The notes: a model not told the origin generated them from the sequence alone. A DNA stretch of 64,000 bases from Fimbriosthenelais zetlandica (GCA_977030845.1 OZ365109.1:61752001-61816000); one strand, 5' to 3'; counted from the first letter of the stretch, positions 40,335 to 58,517 are shown. Made by a program: numbers and translations.

Positions 40335-40406
40335 GTCCAGATAGCCTAGAGGTAAGGCACTGGCCTTGAACGCGGGAGATCGGGGTTCGATTCCCAGCCT
40401 CTTCAA
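40335..40406 (+). pseudogene. Solitary tRNA-derived (Gly-like) pseudogene / SINE head
   Basis: A-box TAGCCTAGAGG, B-box GGTTCGATTCC and downstream T-run; acceptor stem does not pair. Confidence 0.65.
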
Positions 40407-42174: not shown

Positions 42175-44092
42175 TCATGACTTAGTCGAGTCATCCGCTT
42201 TAGCACTGGATGACTCAGTAGAACTTTCCCCCTTGGTCTTGCACTCTTTTTTGATGACCACTTTGAGACCTTTACGTTCGGTGATTGTTTCTATGGTGTG
42301 AGTGGGATCAGGCTCACCAATTGAAGTATCATATGGTGAATTAGGATCAGTTAGATCCTCTTCACAGAAGGAGCCACTCGCCTCCAGTAGAGCTGTGCCT
42401 GCTGTGGTAAATACCTGCTGTACATTCATGGGCTGTTTAGCTATAGGATCTCCAGGGTGATGTTTCTTCATATGACCCGTGAACTCAAACTTACGACCGA
42501 ACCCTCTCATACATTTAAAGCAGAAGTAGGGGAACTGGCCAGTATGGTGCTGCATATGTTCTTTAAGGCCACGTTTTGAGAGGAGCATCTTGCCACACTG
42601 TTGGCATTGGTAGCCTCCAGGTCCGTCATGGAAGACCATCTTGTGTTCAGCGTAATCGCCGTGATGCCAGAATCTCTTTCCACACAACTCACAGCGATAG
42701 GAGACTTTAATTTTGTGGATCATTTTCATGTGGCGGCGACAGGTTGTCTGGTCGGCGAATATCTCATTACAAACACTACACATGACTCCATCTGATTCAT
42801 CTAGGATCAACATACAGGCCCCGCCTGGATTACCCCCGCCTCCTGTGAGCTGGCTGAAGGAGAGGTTCCCATCCATGGTGAAGTTTAGGTTATCACTGAG
42901 TTCACCATCAATACAATGGTCGATATAAACTAATGGTTGGCCATCATCTCCTTCCTCGTCCTCGTCCTCCTCCTCTTCCTCATCGTTACTTCCCGTGTCT
43001 ATTTTAAGACTGTCTGATTGATTGCTTACGTTGTCGTCTCGGCTCTGGTTGGAATCCACGTCATCTATATCACGAAGGATGGGCTTCATACCACTCAGGA
43101 ACTGACCTAGATCTGTTGCTGACTGCATAGGAAATTGTGTCAAATTAGTAATTAACTTAAAAACAGTAAAATTAAAAATGTGTATAATATTATAATTGAT
43201 AAATATAGCATTTATTTTAGTAACTGGATCATAAATTATACATGAAAAATGACATTCTAGAAAATATCGATCTATTTTAAATATTGAAATTGTTTTTCTG
43301 ATAGAAAATGGAAGGTAAAAACACATATTTATGAAGGTCAACGAAAACAACATTTGATATAGATTAAATATGATAGAAATTCATAGACACATACAATAAA
43401 ATCTAACTTATAGAGTCATATCAACTTGACATTTGTCTCACCTGTTCAGGAAAAACTGGCTGGGAGGCGATAACAGAAGATAGGGTTCGTGTAGAGATAG
43501 ACTTGCGAGGTTTAGTTTTCTTTGTCTTTGGATCCCACAATGCCCTCTTCTTCATTGGTTCAATAGTGTAAGTTTCTGCCTCCTCTCTTTCGCTGTTTTC
43601 TTGTGCGCCATTCATGGAGTCTTCGCCTTCAGCCTCATCCCCTGATACTGGTTCCTCTTTGATCAGAATTTCAGCCCGGGTGGCAGACCGGGTTCTTTTT
43701 AACGGAGGTTCATTCTCTGATGGTTTAGTTGTTCTTTTCCCTTTGCCAGGACTGGGGGTGGTGGTAGCTGGTACCTTGGGTGTACTACTCAATGGCACTG
43801 AGACAGTAGTACTGGTACCGGTAGCTGCCCTGAACTTTTTTTTACCCAGAATTGTGGGAGATGATGGCCTAGCGGGTTCTCGTGATTGGGAGGCAGTGGA
43901 TACTAAATAACCAGAGTTGTGAATTGTTTCGTTGATGTTGACAAGAAATACTTCGCTCTCATCCAGGGTTATGCCTATGAGGCCCTCTAGACTGAAGTTT
44001 CTCTTGTAGTTCAGACATTTACGGAGGATATTAGCCATGGACTGGACAAGGATGGCCTTGATCTGCTCCTGTTCTCCCCGGTCTGCCAACAT
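42175..44092 (-). CDS. C2H2 zinc-finger protein (4 fingers) with an unnamed N-terminal alpha/beta domain, ~532 aa, 2 coding exons
   Basis: Exons 44092-43442 and 43122-42175, phase 0. Fingers CSVC..HMKMIH, CELC..HKMVFH, CQQC..HMQHH, CFKC..HMKKHH with a TGQFPY linker; acidic tract and basic NLS-like PPLKRTR. Confidence 0.88.
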
Positions 44093-46358: not shown

Positions 46359-49300
46359 CTATTCATCCAACTTTTTGCGGTTGGCTGCCATCTCGAGATT
46401 GGTGAGGGTCTCATCCCATTGAACGAACTGCTTTGAAAGTAAGGCCACCTGATATCTGGTTAAGGATTCTATGTAAAACTCTAAGAATTTATTGCACACA
46501 CTTCTAACAATCAACGTATCCACTCTTTTTCAAATACCAGTATGTTTCTGTCCAATATCAAATAATTTACTAGAAAGTATATACTAAGTCTTCTATAAAT
46601 AATACTTTTATCTTGCCATTTAAAGGATACAACATTGTTGTAGTAGAGGAGGAGATTCTTTATTTCTTCGGTAACCTCACTAGCATCATCCTGAAGAAAT
46701 AAAAATACTATTTATGAGAAAAATTTCACACATTTCGTCAATAAAGGTTATCTAATATATGTATGCCAGGAACAAATTTAAAATTTGTTATTTTGTACAG
46801 AAGACTTCATCGGTAAAATACGGGTTTTCATCAATGTGGAACACATTACCTGCTGTTTAAGATGCACTGTACTCAGGGCTTGGAGTTGTCCTTGTAAAGA
46901 TGGCACAACTGGAATAAGGTAATTGAACAATAAGGACACCACGTTTACAATCTTATATTAGCTTTGAAAGGTAAACGAACGCTTCAAGAAGGAATACGTC
47001 ATGCGCTGAATACTTCATTAAAGCATTAATGAGATGGAAATTTAGATATATTTTCTTTTAATATTCGCAGTACCGTTTTCATTTTTTGCTTCTGTTGAAC
47101 CAGTTTTGTCTTGGATATGAAAATTATAATTAATTTCTTATATAAGTGCAATTGGTAGACCTTAAACTTTGTGCCTCGGCATAGACCATAACAAAATGAC
47201 TGTAACTGAACGACTGTGCAAAACATAGGATGTACATGTAGTCCAGGAGGCACGTCTACATCATATCCAAGGCGGATCCAGGGAGGCAGGGGTGGGGTGG
47301 GGGGAGGGGGAGGGGGAGGGGGAGCGGTGGTTGTCCAGGATGTCGATGGCTAACAGGAACCCCCTTAAAGATCTAAAAGGTGGGGTAAATTAAATTCTTT
47401 GCGAACAGAAATTGTATCACTTGAATTATGCAGTGTCACATTGAATATGACACTTCATTTTGAAAGTCCCCTGTCCGCCCCGGATGTCAACAGAAATTAA
47501 TTTTGGTGGAAGACACAAGGAATATATAACCAAGACGCTGGGAAACAACATAATGTACGAGGTCGACTCTTGTGTGTGTTTGGATGAACTTTTTTAATGT
47601 TTTACTGTAAATATATTAATTTGGGTGAGAGTTTTTCAAAAGTAAAAAATCCCATAATGCGCAAAATAACAGGAATACATGTACACTACAGAAAACAAAG
47701 AAAAGGAATATCAAAAGAAATTTAGTTGCCATGTTATTTGGCGTGCAATGAAATATATCAGCATATATCTGTACTGTACATCAGCGCAAATATATGGAAG
47801 TAGGCATTATTGGAATTTTTAAGCACTTTGTCCTTTGCGACATGCTCCATTGTATTGCCGACATTTTAAATTTGAACACTAACAACACGGAATAGGTTAC
47901 AATTTGCTATACTTTTCACTGTGGCTATGACAGACCTACCTTCTAATGGGTTTCCCTTTCCTTCAAGTATCACGAATAAAAGACAATAATCAATTTTCCA
48001 AGATCTACCGCGTTGAATTATTTTACGCTGCATATTAAATGACGCTCTCCTAAGATAGATTGAAGGATATAAGTCTGTCTGGGTTTCATAGATATGTTGC
48101 TAACTTTAGATCAAATCCTTAAACCATGAAAAGAAGAAAGTTATTTTAATTAAACATTAAAATATAACTTTTATTACCTTTGATATGCTCACTGCTCAGT
48201 ATGGGCATCATCTCTTCTACTTTCTGAAGATTAGCGGTCTGTGCATGGAGTAATTCCTCTTCTGAATTATATTATGAGAAAATTGTTAAAAAATTATGTC
48301 ACCGAGATTTGAAAACACGTTTCTACGAGAATCTGTAAAATGTACATTCTTAACATTTCCCTTTTATATTCGTCGTTCGAGCTCACAAATTCATTGACAG
48401 AATGATAGTATAACTGACCTGCCAAAATTATTTCAGCCTTTGCTCCTTGGGACAAAGTGAGCTCTTCTGAGTAAGCTGGGTCAACATATTTCTCCAATTC
48501 CGGCACTGAAATTTAAGGAAGTATTTCAAAATGTGGTTGAAAAATTAGGGGCAAACATGGATTCATTGGAGCGCTATTTACAGAATTGTATGTGGCATTG
48601 GGTAACACAAGATATACTAGTAACTGAGAAAAAGTCAACTCACATCTTTTCATCAGATGTTCTATTTTATTTCTCCCAGCAAGAGCAGCATTGACTTGCC
48701 CGTGGAGATGGGCTAAAGTGTCAATCACCTGTTAATGAACCCATACAACATCAGTCAGTTTATTAGCACAATGACAGAAATTTCATACATGTATCTGCAA
48801 AAGAAATGGATCAGTTTTTATATGAAGGGGGTACCATTTCTGCGCATCAATGCTCACAGACCTTCAAGTTCAACAACTTGTGATCCCAAGTTGTGTATTC
48901 CAGTATTTTCTATGTATGCATGTACATGTAGCTTTTTTGCAGATTGTTACTTGGTGGGAAAGAATATGATTTGTTTCGTAGTGTCAACTCTTTAGGGGAG
49001 GTGCCTTACACATTTGCTAAAAAAATATTTCGGGGTTTGAAGCGGATATATTTGTTGTATTGTGATATTTCTTCATCAGTAATTCATAAAAGTGAAAAAA
49101 AAATCCAAAAGATTATTTGTGACGATCTTGAAAATATATCACTTTGTCAGAATTTATCATAGAAATTATTTAGACAAACTGATTTCTAGTAGAATGATAT
49201 AAAACAACACCAAAAGCAATAAGCTGACACCATAATTATATTCAGAATAACATTACACTTTATAGTCTCTTTTTCTATTGTGTAGTCCATAAGTATCAAC

Positions 49301-51658
49301 ATGCCAAGTACGTCTAGATGTACCATCACCACCACCACCACCAATGTTACCATCACCTACCACTGACAATGTAGAAACTAATCTCCACAGGTAATATAAT
49401 GTAAGATCTCTCTTTTCTATCGTATTCTATCTACGAGACAGGTAGGTGACTGCTAAACCATGGTCAAAACTTTGTAGGACAATAAAGCTACAGAAATGAT
49501 AAGCTGATTCAGTGATCGGTGGTTACTATGATAATGTGTGCAGATGGAAAATGAAGGTTTCAGCTTCTCCCCCATTTGAGTAGAGAATTAGCTTTGTGTG
49601 GTCCACAAGTCAGCAAATTATTAGTCTGTGAGTTAGCTTTTATTATTTACAATTTTGGCTGAAAAGAAGGAATATAATACTCTCATACCTTGTTATGTGC
49701 GTGTAAAATTCATTATGACTAATCACCTTTGGTCCCGGATAAAGTTAATCAAAATGACCTGGGAAAATTATTGATAGAACTCAGAAATGAGAAGAGTGTA
49801 CAAATGGGCCTATAAGCGTTGTGATTAGAAAATAAAAAACCCTGCTAAGTGCAAGAAACCGGTCAAGAATTATTGGAAACTAAACCAAGCACAAAGAAGA
49901 CACAAAAATACATGACATCAATACAATACCAACCTTATCAGCGTCCTATAAGAAATGAAGAGCAGAAAACGCAAACCTTTAGTACTAAAACACATAGATG
50001 ATCTATCGGGTAGGTTACAAGACACATTCAATTCAATGTTAAGAAACTACAAGGACTTATGGCTTAAACAAGTGAAAGCAACAAATGAAAATTTGTAGAC
50101 TTAAGGTAAGAAATCAAGGGAAGGTAAGAAATAAGAGCATATATAGTTGGGTGGTGCATTGTCCATTAGTTACATACATCAACCTTCAGGTGAAGAATGT
50201 CAACGAACGGAATAAAGAATCAATTTAGGGGTATAGTGGTACCGATTGTAAAGGGATGTAAAGTTATTGATTTAGTTGCCTGTTGGCGTTCCAAAAATGA
50301 GACAAATTTTCATGGACCCCAAATTATTAACAATAGACCAATCAACAACGTAGGCCTACCGTAAGTAGAGACACACATCCCCACAAATAATAATAATAAT
50401 AATAGTCAGGCCATTACCTTTTTTTGCATTAAAAAAAATCTGAATTGTAGGCCTAAATGTTACAAGCCTACTGCTAATAGGATATTCCTAACATCTAATG
50501 ATGGTAGGAGCCATTTCTGCTGATGTGCCTGTGAAACACAATGCTTGTTCACCTGAATGGTTGGTTTGTTGCTTCCAAGTAAACTAGCCCCGCCCTGGCC
50601 ACAAACCCACCCTGGCCACAAACCCCCTCCCTCTCCTATAGATACACAGCAGAGCGTCTGCTGCAGGTGCGAAAGCTAAGACCCGTCCGGTGCCTCGAAC
50701 CCAGCACCAGCTACGATCAGTAGGCCTATCACCCACCCCCAGCACTTTGCCATTATGGTGGCCGATGGTGGCCGGTTCGAGGCTCATACATATCTTAGCT
50801 TCTATATAAATTTTATGCTTCAGTGGTTTTAGGCCTATGCATTACTTCAATATATCTACTAACCTCTACCCTCTACCATCCCTATAATAATTAGCCTATA
50901 TCTAATCTAGGCACACGGCAGAGCCTCTGCTGCATGTGGGAAAGGTAAGGCCTGCCCTGTGCCTCGAGCCACCACAAGCTATAATGTTATGGGCTACACT
51001 CCTGTGTGTGTCGTGTGTCAACAGGGAAATTGTGAATGTTCAGTGTCGATTTTTACCAGCCATTTTTCAGCTGTGTTGCGCGTGTCGATTTTTACCCATG
51101 TCATGTCCTACACCCATACTATTAGGCCATAGTGTGGCCTGTCAAGACAGGCCCTAACCAATCAAGTAGCCTACGGGAGTAGGCCTACGGTAGTCAATAT
51201 TGTACTACTAATTTGTAGCCAACTAGGCCTACTACTAGTACTAGGCCAGTACCACCGGTATACCAAACAATTATTTTATTCTTAATAGGGCCCCTATTAG
51301 GCCTACTATTAGGGGGACAAACGCGAGCGGAGCCCTGACCTGACCTGTCCTGTCAGTACGTCTACGACACTATAATTGAGTCTGGAGGGTAGTCATACAA
51401 GTTACTCATAGACATAGTCACAGACAGATAGCCTAGTCAGTGACTATTGTGGGTGTGACTTAGTGTCAAAAATCAACAACTTTAACAGGAGGGAGAGGCC
51501 CGTTACGATCCAACTAGCTGCGTGAAAATGACAAGTACCGGATGCTGAAGAACACAATATACCTTAGGATAGTCAGCATCTTTGTCACCATCCCCGAAGA
51601 CTCCTTTCTCGAGAATTTCTAGGCGCTGTTCTATCGTGTCCAACCAGGCATCCGACAT
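46359..51658 (-). CDS. DCTN3: Dynactin subunit 3 (p22/p24), 186 aa, 7 exons
   Basis: Exons 51658-51563, 48728-48644, 48505-48419, 48261-48178, 46908-46850, 46690-46631, 46448-46359 total 561 nt. IEQRLEILEKGVFG..KYVDP..AKAEIILA..PILSSEHIK..LLSKQFVQWDETL aligns with human DCTN3 as recalled, same length. Confidence 0.95.
47271..47322 (+). repeat. G-run tract (G4 motif) after a GGCGGATCCAGG MITE-like start
   Basis: GGGG/GGGGG runs separated by single bases in DCTN3 intron 4. Confidence 0.5.
49048..49175 (+). mobile_element. Possible highly decayed non-LTR retrotransposon RT fragment
   Basis: YLLYCDISSSVIHKSEKKIQKIICDDLENISLCQNLS*KL loosely resembles the (LY)ADD..LN.DL..I..W...NKL region of CR1/L2-type RTs. 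Confidence 0.3.
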
Positions 51659-51784
51659 TTTCCTGCTGGGCGATAATAGAGATTATGGAAATGTACGCCA
51701 CCACCGGGGAAAACGAAAACTAATGTACTAACGAGAAAAGGGCAAGAGTTCTTCTCGGCAAGCCGTTACAACGAGCCAATATGG

Positions 51785-51841
51785 CCGCACAGTAGCGCTC
51801 CAGTGGATAACCATTCGTTCCTACTGGAGCGTACTGTGCGG
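51785..51841. promoter_or_regulatory. Inverted repeat in the DCTN3 promoter region
   Basis: CCGCACAGTA(G)CGCTCCAGT ... ACTGGAGCGTACTGTGCGG, ~130 bp upstream of the DCTN3 ATG. Confidence 0.55.
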
Positions 51842-52169
51842 AGTAGGCCTATGATTATCCTGCTCAGCTCGCGACAGGAGACATTGAACTAATTTCCCAC
51901 AAAATTCATTTGATAGCCTACCTTTTTTTATGAGCAGCAGGAGTTCTAAGCCACTGAGCCAGCTTTAATACCTGGGATTAGGCTAGCTTTTAGGGTAACG
52001 GCTAAGTTACTTTTTTTTGTGTGTTTTGTATTTAATAGGCCTAATTATCAAGTGCACAATCTGGTTTTCTGGCTGTTTCTCATAATTTAATGAATTCTAA
52101 CTTTCCTGCTCCATAGTTTTAGATTTTGGTAAATATTCTTTATTTCTGGAAAAATGGTAGCCTATATTT

Positions 52170-52298
52170 AGAGGATACATCATGGCAATATTCCTCACGA
52201 GGGGGTATATGGTGAAATATTAGCCGAGGCCCGAAGGGCCGAGGCTAATATTTCACCATATACCCACGAGGGAGGAATATAGCCATGATGTATTTTCT
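52170..52298. mobile_element. Short palindromic (hairpin) element
   Basis: Perfect 23-bp arms 52203-52225 / 52243-52265 around GGCCC-GAA-GGGCC, extended imperfectly to ~60 bp per arm. A collapsed second copy lies at ~52750-52800. Confidence 0.7.
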
Positions 52299-52554
52299 TT
52301 ATACCACGAATAGTTCCCAAATGTTGTAAATTGATTCCCCTTTCCTTGTGTTATATACGAAATAACTCTCTTTCTCGCTCACTTTTCACCAGAGCTCTGT
52401 GTATACATTCAACACACTGCCACTAGTCTGATCCTATTATTAGAATCAGGTGGGAAGTCTTGACCTCAACATGACCTCATTTTGGGTCATTACCTGCATG
52501 CATGTAACAGTTTTTTTTCATCACATGGGTTTATACACAGCAATTGTCAGCTTG

Positions 52555-52626
52555 GCCTCGATGGCTGAATGAGTAGCATGGCTGCTCCCTATGTGGGCGA
52601 ACCGAGTTCGAATCCCGGAGCTTCTG
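52555..52626 (+). pseudogene. tRNA-like head P (Gly-like)
   Basis: TGGCTGAATG A-box-like, B-box GTTCGAATCC, T-run downstream; acceptor stem unpaired. Confidence 0.6.
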
Positions 52627-52970
52627 CACTTTTTGATTTTTGTTCTTACTTATTTCTAAATTTTAGGATTTTTTTACGAGTTGGATTCCTGCAATAATCC
52701 AGGAAGTTTTCGAGAAGAGACATTTTGTGTATAGAATCATATGTTTACTTAGAGGATATACCATGGCACTGTATATACCACGGTATACATGTATTGTCTT
52801 TATACCATGAATAGTCGAGAAATATTCTAAATTGATTCCCTTTTCCATGTGTTAGATACAAAATAATTGTCTTTCTCGCTCGCTTCTCGCCTGTGTATAT
52901 TTACATTCGTCAGTTTCTGGGTCAAGGTGTGCAAATGGAATATTATAGCCCCACTGTCTTGGGTCTCCAA

Positions 52971-53043
52971 GCCTTCATGGCCTAATCGGTAGAGCGTCAG
53001 ACTTGTAAACTCAAGGTTGTGAGTTCAAGTCACTTGGTGTTCG
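52971..53043 (+). pseudogene. tRNA-like head Q (Thr/Lys-type, loop CT-TGT-AA)
   Basis: TGGCCTAATCGGTAGAGC, TCAGA-CTTGTAA, B-box GTTCAAGTC; stems mismatched. Confidence 0.65.
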
Positions 53044-53332
53044 TTGTGAATTTTGACACTATAGCGCTCATGTCTACCACACATGATAATTCTTGGCTAT
53101 GTGTGGAAGACAATAATGCCCTAGGGCGGTATATCGTGAAATAATGCCTCGTATATCGGGCAGAAATTGGAGTTGGAGTGGTATAATAGCCTATAATTAT
53201 ATGGCATATAAGCGGCAGCAGCCGCAGATGGAGCAGCAGCAGGTGCACTAGCAGCAGCAGGAGTTCAAAGTTATTGAAGGTCTCATGGGCGCCACCCAGC
53301 CAGCTCTACGTGGGATTACATGTAATACGTGA

Positions 53333-53405
53333 TCCGTCATAGCTCACATGGTAGAGTGTTGGATTTCAAATCCAGGGGTTGTGTTTTCGAATCCCCTTTG
53401 GGAGA
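53333..53405 (+). pseudogene. tRNA-like head X1 (loop TT-TCA-AA)
   Basis: TAGCTCACATGGTAGAG, TTGGA-TTTCAAA-TCCAG, degenerate B-box TTTCGAATCC, T6 downstream. Confidence 0.7.
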
Positions 53406-53731
53406 ATGCTTTTTTGCTTTTGGCGCCTTATTCTGCAAACAAAAAGTAATCCGTCTCCAGTGCAGCCTGAAATCACCCACCATTCCCTAAAGAATTTTTA
53501 TTAATGATTATCAAGTCCAAAAACTGGTTTTCCGACTATTTATTCCCCATAATTTAATAAACGTTTTGCCTCGGCAGCAGATGCAGCGCCACCAGAAGCC
53601 TCGGAAGCAGATGCAACGGCAGCAGATGGAGGAGCAGCAGATGGAATGGCAGCAGATGGCAAAGCAGCAGATGGCAATGGGCGCCACTCAGCCAGTTTTA
53701 GCCTGTATAGGGAAACGGTTCCAGTATATAA

Positions 53732-53803
53732 GCCTTGATAGCTCAGATGGTAGGCTCTTGCCTTTGAAAGCCAAAGGTCCTGGGATCGAACCCCCTCTGG
53801 ATC
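53732..53803 (+). pseudogene. tRNA-like head Y1 (loop TT-TGA-AA)
   Basis: TAGCTCAGATGGTAG, B-box GGATCGAACC, T4 downstream. Confidence 0.7.
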
Positions 53804-54196
53804 TATGTTTTCTCTTTTAAGCTTTTTGTTGCTGACTAACAATGATCGACTGCACAATCGGATTTTTCTGGCTGTTCCTCATCACTTAACCCATTCTTTA
53901 GCTTCCCTTCTTGAGAGATCTCCAAACATTTAGCTTGTGACACGTTAACAAGATCAAAATATTTCATAATTATTCAATAAGAGGGAAACATTTGGTGGTC
54001 CATGACCTAAAAGGCTGCCACCTTCTGCTTGAGACATGAAGTAAAATCTCCCCACAATTAATTTCAATTAAAAGAAGGCAGATAACAGCACCAGAGAGGG
54101 GTTTCATCGCTTAATCCTCGGATGCCACATTCGCCAGCCAGACTGCAATAACGGGGGTAACAGAACTGGTTGTAGTTGATAGCCTAGTCCATGTGA

Positions 54197-54269
54197 TCCA
54201 TCGTAGCTCAGATGGTAGAGTGTTGGATTTCAAATCCAAGGGTTGTGTTTTCGAATCCCCTTTGGGAGA
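54197..54269 (+). pseudogene. tRNA-like head X2 (loop TT-TCA-AA)
   Basis: Copy of X1 at +864; perfect arm TTGGA/TCCAA. Confidence 0.7.
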
Positions 54270-54587
54270 ATGCTTTTTTGCTTTTGGCGCCTTATTCTGC
54301 AAACAAAAAGTAATCCGTCTCCAGTGCAGCCTCAAATCACCCACCATTCCCTAAAGAATTTTTAGTAATGATTATCAAGTCCAAAAACTGGTTTTCCGAC
54401 TATTTATTCCCCATAATTTAATAAACGTTTTGCCTCGGCAGCAGATGCAGCGCCACCAGAAGCCTCGGAAGCAGATGCAACGGCAGCAGATGGAGCAGCA
54501 GCAGATGGAATGGCAGCAGATGGCAAAGCAGCAGATGGCAATGGGCGCCACTTTTAGCTTGTATAGGGTAACGGTTCCAGTGTATAA

Positions 54588-54660
54588 GCCTTGCTAGCTC
54601 ATATGATAGAGTGCTTGATTTCAAACCCTAAGGTCATGGGATCGAATCCCCTTTTGCACC
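54588..54660 (+). pseudogene. tRNA-like head Z (loop TT-TCA-AA)
   Basis: GCCTTGC-TAGCTCATATGATAGAG, B-box GGATCGAATCC, T5 downstream; Lys-type overall. Confidence 0.7.
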
Positions 54661-54949
54661 ATGCTTTTTCCTTTTTAGCGCTTTATCTGTAACTAATAAT
54701 TATCAAGTGCACAATCTGGTTTTCTGGCTGTTTCTCATAATTTAATGAATTTTAACTTTCCTGCTCCATAGTTTTAGATTTTGGTAAATATTCTTTATTT
54801 CTGGAAAAATGGTAGCCTATATTAGCCTATATATGGCATAAGCGGCAGCAGCCGCAGATGGAGCAGCAGCAGGTGCACTAGCAGCAGCAGGAGTTCAAAG
54901 CTATTGAAGGTCTCAGCCAGCTCTACGTGGGATTACATATAATACGTGA

Positions 54950-55022
54950 ACCGTCATAGCTCAGATGGTAGAGTGTTGGATTTCAAATCCGGGGGTTGTG
55001 TTTTCGAATCCCCTTTGGGGGA
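54950..55022 (+). pseudogene. tRNA-like head X3 (loop TT-TCA-AA)
   Basis: Copy of X1 at +1617. Confidence 0.7.
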
Positions 55023-55348
55023 ATGCTTTTTTGCTTTTGGCGCCTTATTCTGCAAACAAAATGTAATCCGTCTCCAGTGCAGCCTGAAATCACCCACCAT
55101 TCCCTAAAGAATTTTTATTAATGATTATCAAGTCCAAAAACTGGTTTTCCGACTATTTATTCCCCATAATTTAATAAACGTTTTGCCTCGGCAGCAGATG
55201 CAGCGCCACCAGAAGCCTCGGAAGCAGATGCAACGGCAGCAGATGGAGGAGCAGCAGATGGAATGGCAGCAGATGGCAAAGCAGCAGATGGCAATGGGCG
55301 CCACTCAGCCAGTTTTAGCTTGTATAGGGAAACGGTTCCAGTATATAA

Positions 55349-55420
55349 GCCTTGATAGCTCAGATGGTAGGCTCTTGCCTTTGAAAGCCAAAGGTCCTGG
55401 GATCGAACCCCCTCTGGATC
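55349..55420 (+). pseudogene. tRNA-like head Y2
   Basis: Copy of Y1 at +1617. Confidence 0.7.
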
Positions 55421-55813
55421 TATGTTTTCTCTTTTAAGCTTTTTGTTGCTGACTAACAATGATCGACTGCACAATCGGATTTTTCTGGCTGTTCCTTATC
55501 ACTTAACCCATTCTTTAGCTTCCCTTCTTGAGAGATCTCCAAACATTTAGCTTGTGACACGTTAACAAGATCAAAATATTTCATAATTATACAATAAGAG
55601 GGAAACATTTGGTGGTCCATGACCTAAAAGGCTGCCACCTTCTGCTTGAGACATGAAGTAAAATCTCCCCACAATTAATTTCAATTAAAAGAAGGCAGAT
55701 GACAACACCAGAGAGGGGTTTCATCGCTTAATCCTCGGATGCCACATTCGCCAGCCAGACTGCAATAACGGGGGTAACAGAACTGGTTGTAGTTGATAGC
55801 CTAGTCCATGTGA

Positions 55814-55886
55814 TCCATCATAGCTCAGATGGTAGAGTGTTGAATTTCAAATCCAGGGGATGTGTTTTCGAATCCCCTTTGGGAGA
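55814..55886 (+). pseudogene. tRNA-like head X4 (loop TT-TCA-AA)
   Basis: Copy of X2 at +1617; one stem mismatch. Confidence 0.7.
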
Positions 55887-56212
55887 ATGCTTTTTTGCTT
55901 TTGGCGCCTTATTCTGCAAACAAGAAGTAATCCGTCTCCAGTGCAGCCTCAAATCACCCACCATTCCCTAAAGAATTTTTAGTAATGATTATCAAGTCCA
56001 AAAACTGGTTTTCCGACTATTTATTCCCCATAATTTAATAAACGTTTTGCCTCGGCAGCAGATGCAGCGCCACCAGAAGCCTCGGAAGCAGATGCAGCGG
56101 CAGCAGATGGAGGAGCAGCAGATGGAATGGCAGCAGATGGCAAAGCAGCAGATGGCAATGGGCGCCACTCAGCCAGTTTTAGCTTGTATAGGGAAACGGT
56201 TCCAGTATATAA

Positions 56213-56284
56213 GCCTTGATAGCTCAGATGGTAGGCTCTTGGCTTTGAAAGCCAAAGGTCCTGTGATCGAACCCCTTCTGGATT
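56213..56284 (+). pseudogene. tRNA-like head Y3
   Basis: Copy of Y2 at +864; perfect arm TTGGC/GCCAA. Confidence 0.7.
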
Positions 56285-56641
56285 TATGTTTTCTCTTTTA
56301 AGCTTTTTGTTGCTGACTAACAATGATCGACTGCACAATCGGATTTTTCTGGCTGTTCTTCATCACTTAACCAATTTTTTAGCTTCCCTTCTTGAGAGAT
56401 CTCCAAACATTTAGCTTTTGACACTTTAAAATATTTCATAGGGGGCCTATACAATAAGAGGGAAACATTTGGTGGTCCATGACCTAAAAGGCTGCCACCT
56501 TGTTGTTGAGACATGAAGTAAGATCTCCCACAAGAAGACAGATGATAGCACCAGACGGTGGTTTCATATGCGCCACTCAGACAGCAGTAACGGGGATTAC
56601 ATAACTGCTTGTAGTTGATATCCTAGACCTAGTGCATGTTA

Positions 56642-56690
56642 TCCATCATAGCTCAGATGGTAGTGTTGGATTTTAAATCCATGGGTTCCC
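56642..56690 (+). pseudogene. Truncated tRNA-like head X5 (loop TT-TTA-AA)
   Basis: TAGCTCAGATGG..TTGGA-TTTTAAA-TCCAT, cut off by an inverted segment at 56693. Confidence 0.6.
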
Positions 56691-58060
56691 ATTCTGTCTT
56701 CTTTTAATTGAAATTAATTGTGCGAGATCTTACTTCATGTCTCAAGCACAAGGTGGTAGCCTTTTTCTATATACCTCTAGGTCATGGACCACCAAATGTT
56801 TCCCTCTAAGGCCAACTAAGCAAATCCATTTATAAAGTTGGACAGAGTATCCATCTCTACCACGGGACAGGGCTGGTTATACTGGCTAGTATAAAGTATG
56901 CATACATTGATTAAGTACTAAACACGAAAATGAAAAATGAAAAAAATATATCTACAATCAGCCAGTTTTAAAAACTATGACCCCAGAATATTCCCTTTTT
57001 CCCCCATGTCGACTACATCCCTGCAGATAGATCATCAATAAATCGAAACTTCGAAGCAAACAAGTCCAATCATAACCTAGCCTACTTGGTCAATGTACCT
57101 TTTTAATTTAGTCTTCCCCAATCTCGAAAGTATGAACATTTTTTTTTTAACAAATTCAGCTTTATTGAACAAACGAACGTCAGGTCAAACAATGCACAAC
57201 ATGGAGAACGGTCTTAATGGCCGAACACAATGCAATTAAATCACTCGATTAATATTTTCCATTAATTTTAGCCTACACATATATTTAAGGGCTATAATAT
57301 AGATAGGCCTACCGGTACAAAATAAGCCACTTTATAAATTTTAGTTCGGTCCAGGCAGGCCTACGGTACCCTAGTGTACGACAATCCTCTCTTTTACCAA
57401 TAGGCAATCTTCTAACAAATTCAAATTAATTCCGTTTTTACCTCTTTGTCAAGACATGCAAGATGAAATATCTCAAAACTTATATACAAACAAGAACAGC
57501 TTTTAGGCGTTCAAAATTCAACTTCCGGGTAGCTAACATTGAAACACAAAAAAAAGTCAGAACCATAGTGCCTGGTACATGACTGCATTTCTATAAGGCA
57601 TTGTATTCAACTTTGGTTCATTATATTCCGGTATGCATCAGTACAAAACATATACTGTAGAAATGTATAATTTCTGGGACTAACTTAATGTGAATGATAG
57701 GCATAGCATTTTTCAGTACCGGTGCCAGTATATTATCATATACAGCCTATGATAAGGTAGACATTACCGTATAAATAAAGATGCAAAAATATCACATTAA
57801 TTTGGGAATGTTTCAATAAATAATTTATAAACCTTTCCTGCACATGGTACGGTACACAGTATATATAAATTAACTCAAGTTCTAACGCCCGAACTCAAGC
57901 GCCTCCCTAAGAATTTTCAAAATAAATTATAGCGCACGTTCAAAGCCATCATACATTACACCTTCTGTATTAGCCATAAAGCATGACATGATTAATTTAC
58001 GGTACATCTTTACGATAATATTTGTTGATACTTATGAACACCATTAGTACGAATATGCAA

Positions 58061-58165
58061 AGTGGGTGTAAACTTCATTGCATACATGCATGTCAAACAT
58101 AGACGGTACTATAAGTGGGTGTAAACTTCATTGCATACATGCATGTCAAACACAGACGGTACTAT
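58061..58165 (+). repeat. 53-bp tandem duplication in the ACSBG 3' UTR region
   Basis: AGTGGGTGTAAACTTCATTGCATACATGCATGTCAAACA(T/C)AGACGGTACTATA occurs twice (58061 and 58114). Confidence 0.85.
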
Positions 58166-58517
58166 ATTATTAAATTTTGATCATCTTCGAGATTTTGATC
58201 TCACATTCTGACTGATGGGTTAAATAATATATTTAACCCTAAATGCCCCCATGGAATGGACAAACACATGTATATAATTATGTATACAGTATTTCAATTG
58301 TACTGAAATCAGCAAATTATACCACATAGTCTTTTTAAACATTTGCATTGACCAAAATTATAAAGATTTTTTATCAGGTCAAATGAGACCCACCCATATC
58401 AAAATGGTCATGAAAGACCCAGTACCCAAATTACCCATCCATATTCTAGAGGTCCCATTTAGCACAAAGAATTATTAAACATTTATATATCTGTCCTATA
58501 CAAAATGCACATCAACT

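What the first reader, a model, noticed from the sequence alone, without database searches (positions are those of the whole stretch)
51930..56807. Higher-order array of 11 tRNA-like Pol III cassettes filling the ACSBG-DCTN3 intergenic space
Seen: heads at 52555, 52971, 53333, 53732, 54197, 54588, 54950, 55349, 55814, 56213 and 56642. Each has an A-box and, apart from truncated X5, is followed within ~15 nt by a T4-T6 run. Acceptor and T stems have decayed, so these are not functional tRNAs. Known: SINEs normally continue into a body and tail, whereas head-then-terminator is tRNA-gene architecture. Inference: a recently amplified cluster of tRNA-lookalike mini-genes able to make ~80-90-nt RNAs (or tRF precursors); I do not recognise it as a named element.
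Basis: partly seen in the sequence, partly recalled or inferred. Interest (0 to 1): 0.8.

Follow-up and report, generated by a model that had tools for sequence, protein, structure and literature searches.

The report
Tandem array of decayed tRNA-like genes
A 4.9-kb stretch between two animal genes is a locally duplicated array of about 0.4-kb units, each carrying a worn-out tRNA-like gene with its promoter boxes and stop signal; it is a real but ordinary kind of tRNA-pseudogene cluster, with no sign that the RNAs are kept by selection.

Summary
Eleven same-strand tRNA-like heads lie at the stated coordinates, 362-465 bp apart. Each has an A box at position 8 and a B-box-like motif at position 51/52. 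All but the truncated X5 have a T4-T6 run near +76 to +84.

They are not independent SINE insertions. Heads, terminators and spacers are homologous as whole units of about 0.4 kb, which were duplicated at the DNA level in layers (864-bp pairs, then a super-unit of about 1.6 kb at 98.4% identity). One end is an inverted duplication.

Only X2 reaches Rfam's tRNA threshold, and default ARAGORN finds none. D and anticodon arms still pair (86% and 80%), while acceptor and T stems do not (49% and 54%). No head folds better than shuffled sequence, except weakly B.

Heads are no better conserved than spacers between old unit types. Among recent copies the X heads diverge about 4 times faster than the rest.

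A related species has the ACSBG orthologue but no array downstream. Other first-reader notes (unchecked) report similar cassette arrays elsewhere in this genome.

Best reading: a lineage-specific, neutrally evolving tandem tRNA-pseudogene array, possibly still bound or transcribed by Pol III. New member of a known kind, low to moderate interest.

The parts
51935..52168 (+). Headless unit U0. It has the upstream motif (AAGCCACTGAGCCAG at 51948), a T8 run and a Z-type spacer, but the roughly 90 nt that hold the head in unit Z are replaced by 9 nt.
   Evidence: 52042-52168 is 99% identical to 54697-54823; unit alignment; motif.
52169..53186 (+). Block of about 1 kb that carries a palindrome and heads A and B. 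It is absent from the paralogous copy of the array and is bracketed by a 10-bp direct repeat (TAGCCTATAT / TAGCCTATAA).
   Evidence: In the paralogous copy the two 10-mers lie adjacent at 54814-54833. 53193-53285 matches 54824-54915 at 99%.
52175..52293 (.). 119-nt near-perfect palindrome at the left edge of the 1-kb block.
   Evidence: Inverted repeat I1, 84-86% complementary. It gives only sub-threshold miRNA-model hits.
52555..52634 (+). Head A with a T5 run.
   Evidence: A box 1 mismatch, B box 1 mismatch, T5 at +76. Relaxed ARAGORN calls it Arg(cct). No Rfam tRNA hit at E<=10.
52971..53054 (+). Head B with a T4 run.
   Evidence: Rfam tRNA 24.9 bits, below the threshold of 29. Relaxed ARAGORN calls it Thr(tgt).
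53333..53415 (+). Head X1 (anticodon-like loop TTTCAAA) with a T6 run.
   Evidence: Rfam tRNA 23.4 bits; boxes and T-run.
53732..53811 (+). Head Y1 (loop TTTGAAA) with a T4 run.
   Evidence: Relaxed ARAGORN calls it Ser(tga). B box GGATCGAACCC, 1 mismatch.
54197..54279 (+). Head X2 with a T6 run, the best tRNA match in the array.
   Evidence: Rfam tRNA 34.6 bits against a gathering score of 29. The T stem is largely unpaired in the cmscan alignment.
54588..54669 (+). Head Z, with an internal T4 at +65 and T5 at +78.
   Evidence: It is 79% identical to Y1 and 72% to X1 over the head.
54950..55032 (+). Head X3 with a T6 run.
   Evidence: Rfam tRNA 24.2 bits.
55349..55428 (+). Head Y2 with a T4 run.
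   Evidence: The head is identical to Y1. Relaxed ARAGORN calls it Ser(tga).
55814..55896 (+). Head X4 with a T6 run.
   Evidence: Rfam tRNA 20.9 bits.
56213..56292 (+). Head Y3 with a T4 run.
56642..56690 (+). Head X5, cut off after the anticodon arm by an inversion junction.
53567..53680 (+). 15/30-nt minisatellite with a GCAGCAGATGG-type core in the X spacer. The same array recurs at 54436-54538, 55184-55297 and 56053-56161.
   Evidence: Tandem Repeats Finder; family D1.
53681..53695 (+). Conserved spacer motif GCGCCACTCAGCCAG, about 50 nt upstream of the next head. It also occurs at 51948, 53289, 55298, 56162 and 56570. On the minus strand it reads TGGCTGAGTGG, a perfect A-box consensus.
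   Evidence: 7 matches with up to 3 mismatches against 0.38 expected; 6 of the 7 lie in the array.
53182..54753 (+). First copy of the youngest super-unit (X1-Y1-X2-Z).
   Evidence: 94% identity to 54818-56378 over 1582 bp. It is 98.4% if the Z/Y3 part is left out (22 mismatches in 1406 nt).
54818..56378 (+). Second copy of the super-unit (X3-Y2-X4-Y3).
56448..56807 (.). Foldback that ends the array. Its arms are 56448-56533 (Y3 spacer) and 56693-56807 (inverted copy of the Y spacer, 84% identical to 53980-54082). The X5 head lies in the loop.
   Evidence: Inverted repeats I2-I4; BLAST rows.

Best explanation
This is a lineage-specific tandem array of tRNA-derived pseudogenes (a tDNA-like repeat). 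An ancestral unit of about 0.4 kb was multiplied at the DNA level, by unequal crossing-over or segmental duplication, in successive layers. The unit consisted of one tRNA-type Pol III gene with its internal A and B boxes, an oligo-T terminator, a spacer that holds a minisatellite, and an upstream motif.

The layers, from oldest to youngest, are: old unit types (A, B, X, Y, Z), then X+Y pairs of 864 bp, then a super-unit of about 1.6 kb. An inverted duplication closes the right end.

The heads have lost acceptor and T-stem pairing, so they cannot act as tRNAs, and they now drift as fast as or faster than the spacers. Because the A box, most of the B box and the terminators survive, some heads may still recruit TFIIIC/Pol III and give short RNAs of about 80 nt. 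That step is inferred, not shown, and nothing indicates that such RNAs are selected for.
For: Shown:
- Whole units, not only heads, are homologous. X, Y, Z and B share spacer blocks, the minisatellite and the upstream motif.
- The terminator sits at the same place in X, Y and Z (ATG(C)TTTT at +74 to +83). Head-plus-terminator is therefore ancestral, as in a tRNA gene.
- Duplication is layered. The super-units differ by 1.6% (22 of 1406 sites), Y3 differs from Y1/Y2 by 3% in the head and about 6.5% in the spacer (mean over the three Y copies), the inverted arm by about 16%, and the unit types by 20-40%.
- No copy of any unit lies elsewhere in the 64-kb window. Outside the array there is only one other tRNA-like hit at E<=10.
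- The heads are not functional tRNAs. Default ARAGORN finds none. Only 1 of 11 reaches the Rfam threshold. Acceptor pairing is 49% and T stem 54%. There is no cloverleaf minimum-free-energy fold, and z-scores run from -0.8 to +0.5, except B at -2.2.
- There is no purifying selection on the heads. Y1 vs Z is 79% in the head and 78% in the spacer; X1 vs Z is 72% and 78%. Between the recent super-units, 8 of 22 mismatches fall in the 168 nt of the two X heads (P=0.003-0.004).
- The array is not conserved. In a relative whose ACSBG exons are about 74% identical in nucleotides and 85% in amino acids, the 9 kb downstream of the ACSBG orthologue hold no tRNA-like hit at E<=1 and nothing similar to the array.

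From the literature: tDNA and pseudogene clusters with spacing under 1 kb and fast turnover are common in eukaryotes (PMC2888827). A repeat of about 420 bp per tRNA gene is described in Arabidopsis (PMC10701932).
Against: - The common ancestor of X, Y and Z already seems to lack a good acceptor stem. The founder may therefore have been a tRNA-derived element rather than a bona fide tRNA gene.
- The anticodon stem shows double-sided changes between X and Y (A-U vs C-G at pair 31-39). This hints at past structural constraint, or at input from different tRNAs.
- First-reader notes report many similar cassette arrays elsewhere in this genome. A mobile carrier therefore cannot be excluded without the whole genome.
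- The excess divergence of the X heads is unexplained. Transcription-associated mutagenesis would fit (PMC6130373). However, X has the poorer B box, the Y head shows no change, and the test is post hoc on 8 substitutions.
Confidence: 0.7

Rival explanations
1. The array is the internal tandem-repeat part of a mobile DNA element (Helentron/HINE-like, foldback or another non-autonomous element) that captured a tRNA-type Pol III unit, and it arrived here by transposition.
For: - The right end is a foldback with a head in the loop.
- A 1-kb block is bracketed by a 10-bp direct repeat whose two copies are adjacent in the paralogous copy, like a target-site duplication next to an empty site.
- First-reader notes for other windows of this genome describe tRNA-cassette arrays in putative rolling-circle or foldback elements (unchecked).
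- HINEs are known to carry central tandem repeats (PMC7492417).
- The Arabidopsis tRNA-Cys cluster overlaps Helitrons (PMC10701932).
Against: - No pair of subterminal inverted repeats links the left and right borders beyond chance: 1 hit with one mismatch, against 0-12 in shuffles.
- No right flank with a subTIR followed by a palindrome was recognised.
- No second copy of any part lies elsewhere in the window.
- The layered divergence (1.6% to 40%) points to long in-place growth.
Confidence: 0.13
2. The heads are maintained Pol III mini-genes that produce functional tRNA-like RNAs or tRNA-fragment precursors of about 80 nt.
For: - A boxes are intact, most B boxes are near consensus, and terminators lie at a conserved position.
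- D and anticodon arms still pair.
- X2 passes the Rfam tRNA threshold.
Against: - Heads are no better conserved than spacers, and X heads are less conserved.
- They fold no better than shuffles.
- Z has a T4 run inside the head.
- The array is absent downstream of the ACSBG orthologue in the related species.
Confidence: 0.07
3. The array works as DNA: a row of TFIIIC/Pol III sites that forms a chromatin boundary between the DCTN3 promoter and the 3' end of the ACSBG-like gene (the reading of the other first-stage note on this stretch).
For: - There are 11 same-strand A/B-box pairs at 362-465-bp spacing, starting about 280 bp upstream of the DCTN3 start codon.
- tRNA genes and a human tRNA tandem repeat are proposed boundary elements (PMC4041453, PMC11830863).
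- Among X1-X4, none of the 9 variable sites hits a specified A-box, B-box or T-run position, though P is only about 0.06.
Against: - The regular spacing follows from tandem duplication and needs no selection.
- Y3 carries a B-box change.
- The array is not conserved in the relative, where DCTN3 is not even adjacent.
- No binding data are available.
Confidence: 0.06
4. The heads are ordinary dispersed tRNA-derived SINE copies that happen to lie together, or the array is an assembly artefact.
For: The heads lack acceptor-stem complementarity, as SINE heads do. A solitary tRNA-like head lies at 40335.
Against: - A T4-T6 terminator directly after each head would stop a Pol III transcript before any body.
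- There is no A-rich or simple-repeat tail and no target-site duplication around single heads.
- The flanks are shared between units.
- Copies differ by substitutions and indels in a consistent nested pattern, which is not what a mis-assembly gives.
Confidence: 0.04

Closest known systems
Eukaryotic tDNA clusters containing tRNA pseudogenes (survey: Bermudez-Santana et al. 2010, PMC2888827)
   Same: Neighbouring tRNA-type loci lie less than 1 kb apart in the same orientation, many are scored as pseudogenes, turnover is fast and lineage-specific, and synteny is poor.
   Different: Here essentially all members are decayed (1 of 11 above the Rfam threshold). No isoacceptor can be assigned with confidence; the loops read TCA or TGA on a class-I body.
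Arabidopsis thaliana chromosome-5 tRNA-Cys cluster (repeat units of about 420 bp; PMC10701932)
   Same: One tRNA-type gene sits in each tandem unit of about 0.4 kb. Units are 84-94% alike, copy number changes by whole units, a pseudogene lies at the edge, and transposon remnants are present.
   Different: The Arabidopsis genes pass tRNAscan-SE's high-confidence filter and keep one anticodon. The heads here have lost acceptor and T stems and have diverged into several types.
tRNA-related Pol III tandem repeats: Xenopus laevis Satellite 1 and the Hydromantes Hy/Pol III family (listed in PMC9659126)
   Same: These are tandemly repeated DNA whose unit contains a tRNA-related region with Pol III promoter boxes.
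   Different: Those are high-copy satellites spread over the genome. This is one 4.9-kb locus with about 12 units and an oligo-T directly after each head.
tRNA-derived SINEs
   Same: Both have a tRNA-like head with A and B boxes and without a working acceptor stem.
   Different: Here there is no body or tail downstream of the head within a transcript, since a terminator lies at +76 to +84. No single head has a target-site duplication, and the flanks are shared between units.
HINE / Helentron non-autonomous elements with central tandem repeats (Cg_HINE, PMC7492417)
   Same: Both show a short satellite-like array in euchromatin next to genes, with microsatellite or minisatellite pieces and palindromes nearby.
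   Different: The defining pair of subterminal inverted repeats, and the right flank with a subTIR followed by a palindrome, were not found at the borders.
Human tRNA VNTR at 1q23.3 and tDNA barrier elements (PMC4041453, PMC11830863)
   Same: Both are tandem repeats carrying tRNA-type Pol III units between genes, and a boundary role has been proposed.
   Different: The human units are 7.3 kb with intact tRNA genes and CTCF binding. No binding or boundary evidence exists here.

Membership tests
Functional cytosolic tRNA gene | Covariance-model score above the curated threshold | tested here: not met
   Rfam RF00005 (gathering score 29): X2 scores 34.6. B 24.9, X3 24.2, X1 23.4 and X4 20.9 are below it. 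A, Y1-3, Z and X5 are not listed at E<=10. Default ARAGORN finds no tRNA.
Functional cytosolic tRNA gene | Cloverleaf with a paired 7-bp acceptor stem and 5-bp T stem | tested here: not met
   Acceptor 49% and T stem 54% of cells paired; D stem 86% and anticodon stem 80%. No cloverleaf in the minimum-free-energy folds.
Functional cytosolic tRNA gene | Gene sequence conserved relative to its flanks (purifying selection) | tested here: not met
   Head identity is equal to or lower than spacer identity. X heads are about 4 times more diverged than the rest of the young duplicate.
Pol III type-2 transcription unit | Internal A box and B box at tRNA spacing, followed by an oligo-T terminator | tested here: met
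   A box at position 8 with 0-1 mismatch in all heads. B box at 51/52 with 1 mismatch (A, Y1, Y2, Z), 2 (X1-4, Y3) or 3 (B). T4-T6 at +76 to +84. This is sequence only; transcription was not tested.
Tandem tDNA / tRNA-pseudogene cluster | Adjacent tRNA-type loci less than 1000 nt apart (criterion of PMC2888827), in the same orientation | tested here: met
   Spacings are 362-465 bp and all heads are on the + strand.
Tandem tDNA / tRNA-pseudogene cluster | Units related by DNA-level duplication (gene plus spacer homologous) | tested here: met
tRNA-derived SINE | Head continues into a transcribed body and tail | tested here: not met
   An oligo-T run lies within 4-12 nt of the end of the head, and there is no A-rich or simple-repeat tail.
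tRNA-derived SINE | Dispersed copies, each with its own target-site duplication | tested here: inconclusive
   There are none elsewhere in the 64-kb window and no duplications around single heads. The rest of the genome could not be searched. Two metagenome scans found nothing.
HINE / Helentron non-autonomous element | 5' and 3' subterminal inverted repeats (11-12 bp), with the 3' one followed by a palindrome, flanking central tandem repeats (PMC7492417) | tested here: not met
   There is one 11-mer inverted match with 1 mismatch between the borders, within the range of shuffles (0-12). Only a 7-bp-stem palindrome lies at 56877. The true borders are uncertain.
tDNA insulator / TFIIIC boundary | TFIIIC occupancy and barrier activity | not testable with these tools
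   Only B-box-like motifs can be shown. The array is absent from the corresponding region of a relative.

The most novel reading that the evidence does not exclude
The heads are kept not as RNAs but as live Pol III/TFIIIC entry sites. On this reading, germline Pol III transcription of the X heads explains their roughly 4-fold excess of substitutions (transcription-associated mutagenesis without purifying selection). Promoter boxes and terminators stay intact, and the array acts as a boundary or small-RNA source upstream of the DCTN3 promoter. It would be one member of a genome-wide class of such cassette arrays.
Probability: 0.12. Interest if true: 0.5.

Novelty: new member of a known kind. 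Interest (0 to 1): 0.25.

Why it matters
The locus is a clean, small example of how a tRNA-type Pol III unit becomes a tandem repeat and then decays. The layered duplications give an internal clock.

The contrast between intact promoter boxes and terminators and broken RNA stems makes it a convenient test case. It can show whether decayed tDNAs still recruit Pol III/TFIIIC, and whether that leaves a mutational footprint.

If the other notes for this genome hold, such arrays are numerous there. They would then matter for tRNA gene annotation, because pseudo or suppressor-type calls such as TCA loops would be false leads. They would also matter for repeat annotation. By itself the locus does not change what is known.

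Tried and rejected
- Independent SINE insertions: rejected because flanks are shared and a terminator follows each head.
- Real tRNA genes, including a UGA-suppressor or Sec-like reading of the TCA loop in X: rejected. The T stem is largely unpaired, the acceptor stem weak, there is no long variable arm, and only X2 is above threshold.
- HINE/Helentron borders: no subterminal inverted repeats beyond chance.
- Coding potential: the 53-105-aa ORFs across the minisatellite and heads are not in the 15-billion-protein collection, and they follow the repeat, so they are taken as spurious.
- Copies elsewhere: two metagenome scans, one with an X/Z head pattern and one with a spacer pattern, each found 0. 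The sequence look-up in the scan's notes was blank.
- Organism identification: not achieved. The nearest DNA is from ENA metagenome-type assembly ERZ25767047 and Logan runs ERR14368245/8/9, at 61-85% protein identity.
- Synteny test: in the relative, the ACSBG orthologue is followed by other ORFs, including an HTH_animal hit on the opposite strand. It is followed by neither DCTN3 nor any tRNA-like sequence.
- Upstream TATATAA at -9 to -3 of Y and Z, and the motif at about -50, considered as a type-3 external promoter: no test was available. The motif's conservation is no greater than that of the surrounding spacer, so the idea was not pursued.

Full report
**What is there**

The stretch 51935-56807 lies between two minus-strand genes. 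On the left is the first coding exon of a probable DCTN3 gene: an ORF at 51503-51658, and a downstream exon at 48294-48506 that hits Pfam Dynactin_p22 at E=1.5e-4, below that family's curated cut-off (22.1 vs 25.2 bits). On the right is the last exon of an ACSBG-like acyl-CoA synthetase, with AMP-binding and AMP-binding_C_3 hits in exons between 58924 and 63288.

The motif TAGCTCAGATGGTAG, allowing up to 3 mismatches, occurs nine times in the 64-kb window, all inside the array. Shuffles give 1.46 expected, and none of 100 reaches nine.

Each head has an A box (TRGCNNANNNGG) at position 8 with 0-1 mismatch and a B-box-like motif at 51/52 with 1-3 mismatches. Each except the truncated X5 has an oligo-T run at +76 to +84 (T5 in A, T4 in B, T6 in X1-4, T4 in Y1-3, T5 in Z). 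Z also has a T4 inside the head at +65.

**How tRNA-like are they**

- Default ARAGORN finds no tRNA in the window.
- Rfam's tRNA model passes only X2 (34.6 bits against a threshold of 29). B, X3, X1 and X4 score 21-25 bits. A, Y1-3, Z and X5 do not appear even at E<=10.
- Relaxed ARAGORN calls A Arg(cct), B Thr(tgt) and Y1/Y2 Ser(tga). These labels are not trustworthy. The X loops read TTTCAAA (TCA) and the Y loops TTTGAAA (TGA), on a class-I body.
- On an alignment of the heads with the canonical cloverleaf imposed, the D stem pairs in 86% of cells and the anticodon stem in 80%. The acceptor stem pairs in only 49% and the T stem in 54%.
- None of the heads folds into a cloverleaf. Their folding energies are ordinary for their composition, with z-scores from -0.8 to +0.5, except B at -2.2.

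**Architecture**

The heads are not separate insertions. Units X, Y, Z and B are homologous over their whole length of about 0.4 kb. The shared parts are:

- the head;
- the short trailer and T-run at the same position;
- a spacer block;
- a 15/30-nt minisatellite with a GCAGCAGATGG-type core;
- a motif GCGCCACTCAGCCAG about 50 nt before the next head.

Duplication happened in layers:

- X+Y pairs of 864 bp.
- A super-unit of about 1.6 kb, 53182-54753 against 54818-56378. This is 94% identical overall and 98.4% when the Z/Y3 part is left out: 22 mismatches and 4 indels in 1406 nt.
- Y3 differs from Y1/Y2 by 3% in the head and about 6.5% in the spacer, as means over the three Y copies.
- The unit types differ from each other by 20-40%.

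A headless unit opens the array at 51935-52168.

A block of about 1 kb (52169-53186) begins with a 119-nt palindrome and holds heads A and B. It is absent from the paralogous copy and is bracketed by a 10-bp direct repeat. The two copies of that repeat are adjacent in the paralogue. I could not explain this.

The right end is a foldback. An inverted copy of the Y spacer (56693-56807, 84% identical) cuts X5 after its anticodon arm.

No part of any unit occurs elsewhere in the window. Outside the array only one other tRNA-like hit exists, at 40335-40405.

**Selection**

Between old unit types, heads are no better conserved than spacers. Y1 vs Z is 79% in the head and 78% in the spacer; X1 vs Z is 72% and 78%.

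Between the two young super-units, 8 of 22 mismatches fall in the 168 nt of the two X heads, none in the Y head, and 14 in the other 1154 nt. Fisher's test gives P=0.004 and the binomial 0.003. Among X1-X4, 9 of 84 head columns vary against 9 of 307 spacer columns.

The heads are therefore not under purifying selection, and the X heads change faster than their surroundings. Elevated mutation at transcribed tRNA loci is known (PMC6130373) and would fit. The test is post hoc on eight substitutions, however. X also has the poorer B box (TTTTCGAATCC), and the Y head shows no change. I treat this as a hint only.

The anticodon stem shows double-sided changes between X and Y. This is consistent with an ancestry in real tRNA structure.

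**Conservation elsewhere**

The nearest DNA I could reach is a metagenome-type assembly of a related animal (ERZ25767047). Its ACSBG orthologue lies at L005:1008-11142, with exons about 74% identical in nucleotides and 85% in amino acids. The 9 kb downstream hold no Rfam tRNA hit at E<=1, no similarity to the array and no DCTN3. The array is lineage-specific at that distance.

Two metagenome scans for head and spacer patterns found nothing. ORFs across the array are not in the protein collection.

**Interpretation**

The best reading is a tandem array of tRNA-derived pseudogenes. It grew in place by unequal crossing-over or segmental duplication and is now drifting. Its Pol III signals are still largely legible, so binding or transcription is possible but unproven.

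This kind is described in the literature:

- tDNA and pseudogene clusters with spacing under 1 kb and rapid turnover (PMC2888827);
- a repeat of about 420 bp per tRNA-Cys gene in Arabidopsis (PMC10701932);
- tRNA-related Pol III tandem repeats in Xenopus and Hydromantes (listed in PMC9659126).

Rivals considered:

- A mobile carrier (HINE/Helentron-like or foldback) cannot be excluded, because first-reader notes (unchecked) report many cassette arrays elsewhere in this genome. The HINE hallmarks were not found at the borders (features from PMC7492417).
- A functional small-RNA gene family, and a TFIIIC boundary, remain possible overlays without support.
- Independent SINE insertions and assembly error are unlikely.

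**Verdict**

It is an ordinary member of a known kind rather than a new element class.

Noticed in passing
window 40335-40405 (+): A solitary tRNA-like sequence passes the Rfam tRNA threshold (32.5 bits). Its anticodon-like loop is CTTGAAC (TGA, as in the Y heads) and a T4 run follows at about +84. It does not fold better than shuffles (z = -0.5). It shares no flank with the array units.
   Followed up: partly
window 52159-53196 and 54814-54833: The ~1-kb block with heads A and B is bracketed by a 10-bp direct repeat (TAGCCTATAT / TAGCCTATAA). The two 10-mers are adjacent in the paralogous copy, like a target-site duplication next to an empty or excised site. No terminal inverted repeats were seen.
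   Followed up: partly
window 52175-52293: A 119-nt near-perfect palindrome (arms about 58-68 nt, 3-nt centre) lies at the left edge of that block. A collapsed version lies at about 52750-52800. It gives only sub-threshold miRNA-model hits.
   Followed up: no
window 53681-53695, 55298-55312, 56162-56176 and variants at 51948, 53289, 56570: The conserved spacer motif reads TGGCTGAGTGG on the minus strand, a perfect Pol III A-box consensus. It lies directly next to the minisatellite. Other first-reader notes mention minisatellites built from SINE A-box heads in this genome.
   Followed up: partly
window 51783-51842: An inverted repeat with arms of about 20 nt lies just upstream of the DCTN3 start codon, in the likely promoter or 5' UTR. 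It gives a sub-threshold mir-22 model hit only.
   Followed up: no
window 58060-58166: A 53-bp unit is repeated twice in tandem at 98% identity, in the interval between the array and the 3' end of the ACSBG-like gene.
   Followed up: no
window 42175-44092 (-): Two large ORFs (392 and 223 aa) belong to a C2H2 zinc-finger gene. Its nearest relatives are unnamed ORFs from ENA and Logan assemblies at 48-76% identity. In the relative, the zinc-finger gene and the ACSBG orthologue lie on different contigs.
   Followed up: partly
L001:2497-6390: In the related species, a full-length Ty3/gypsy-type retrotransposon ORF (RVT_1, RNase H, integrase) sits about 3.6 kb upstream of the zinc-finger orthologue.
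   Followed up: no
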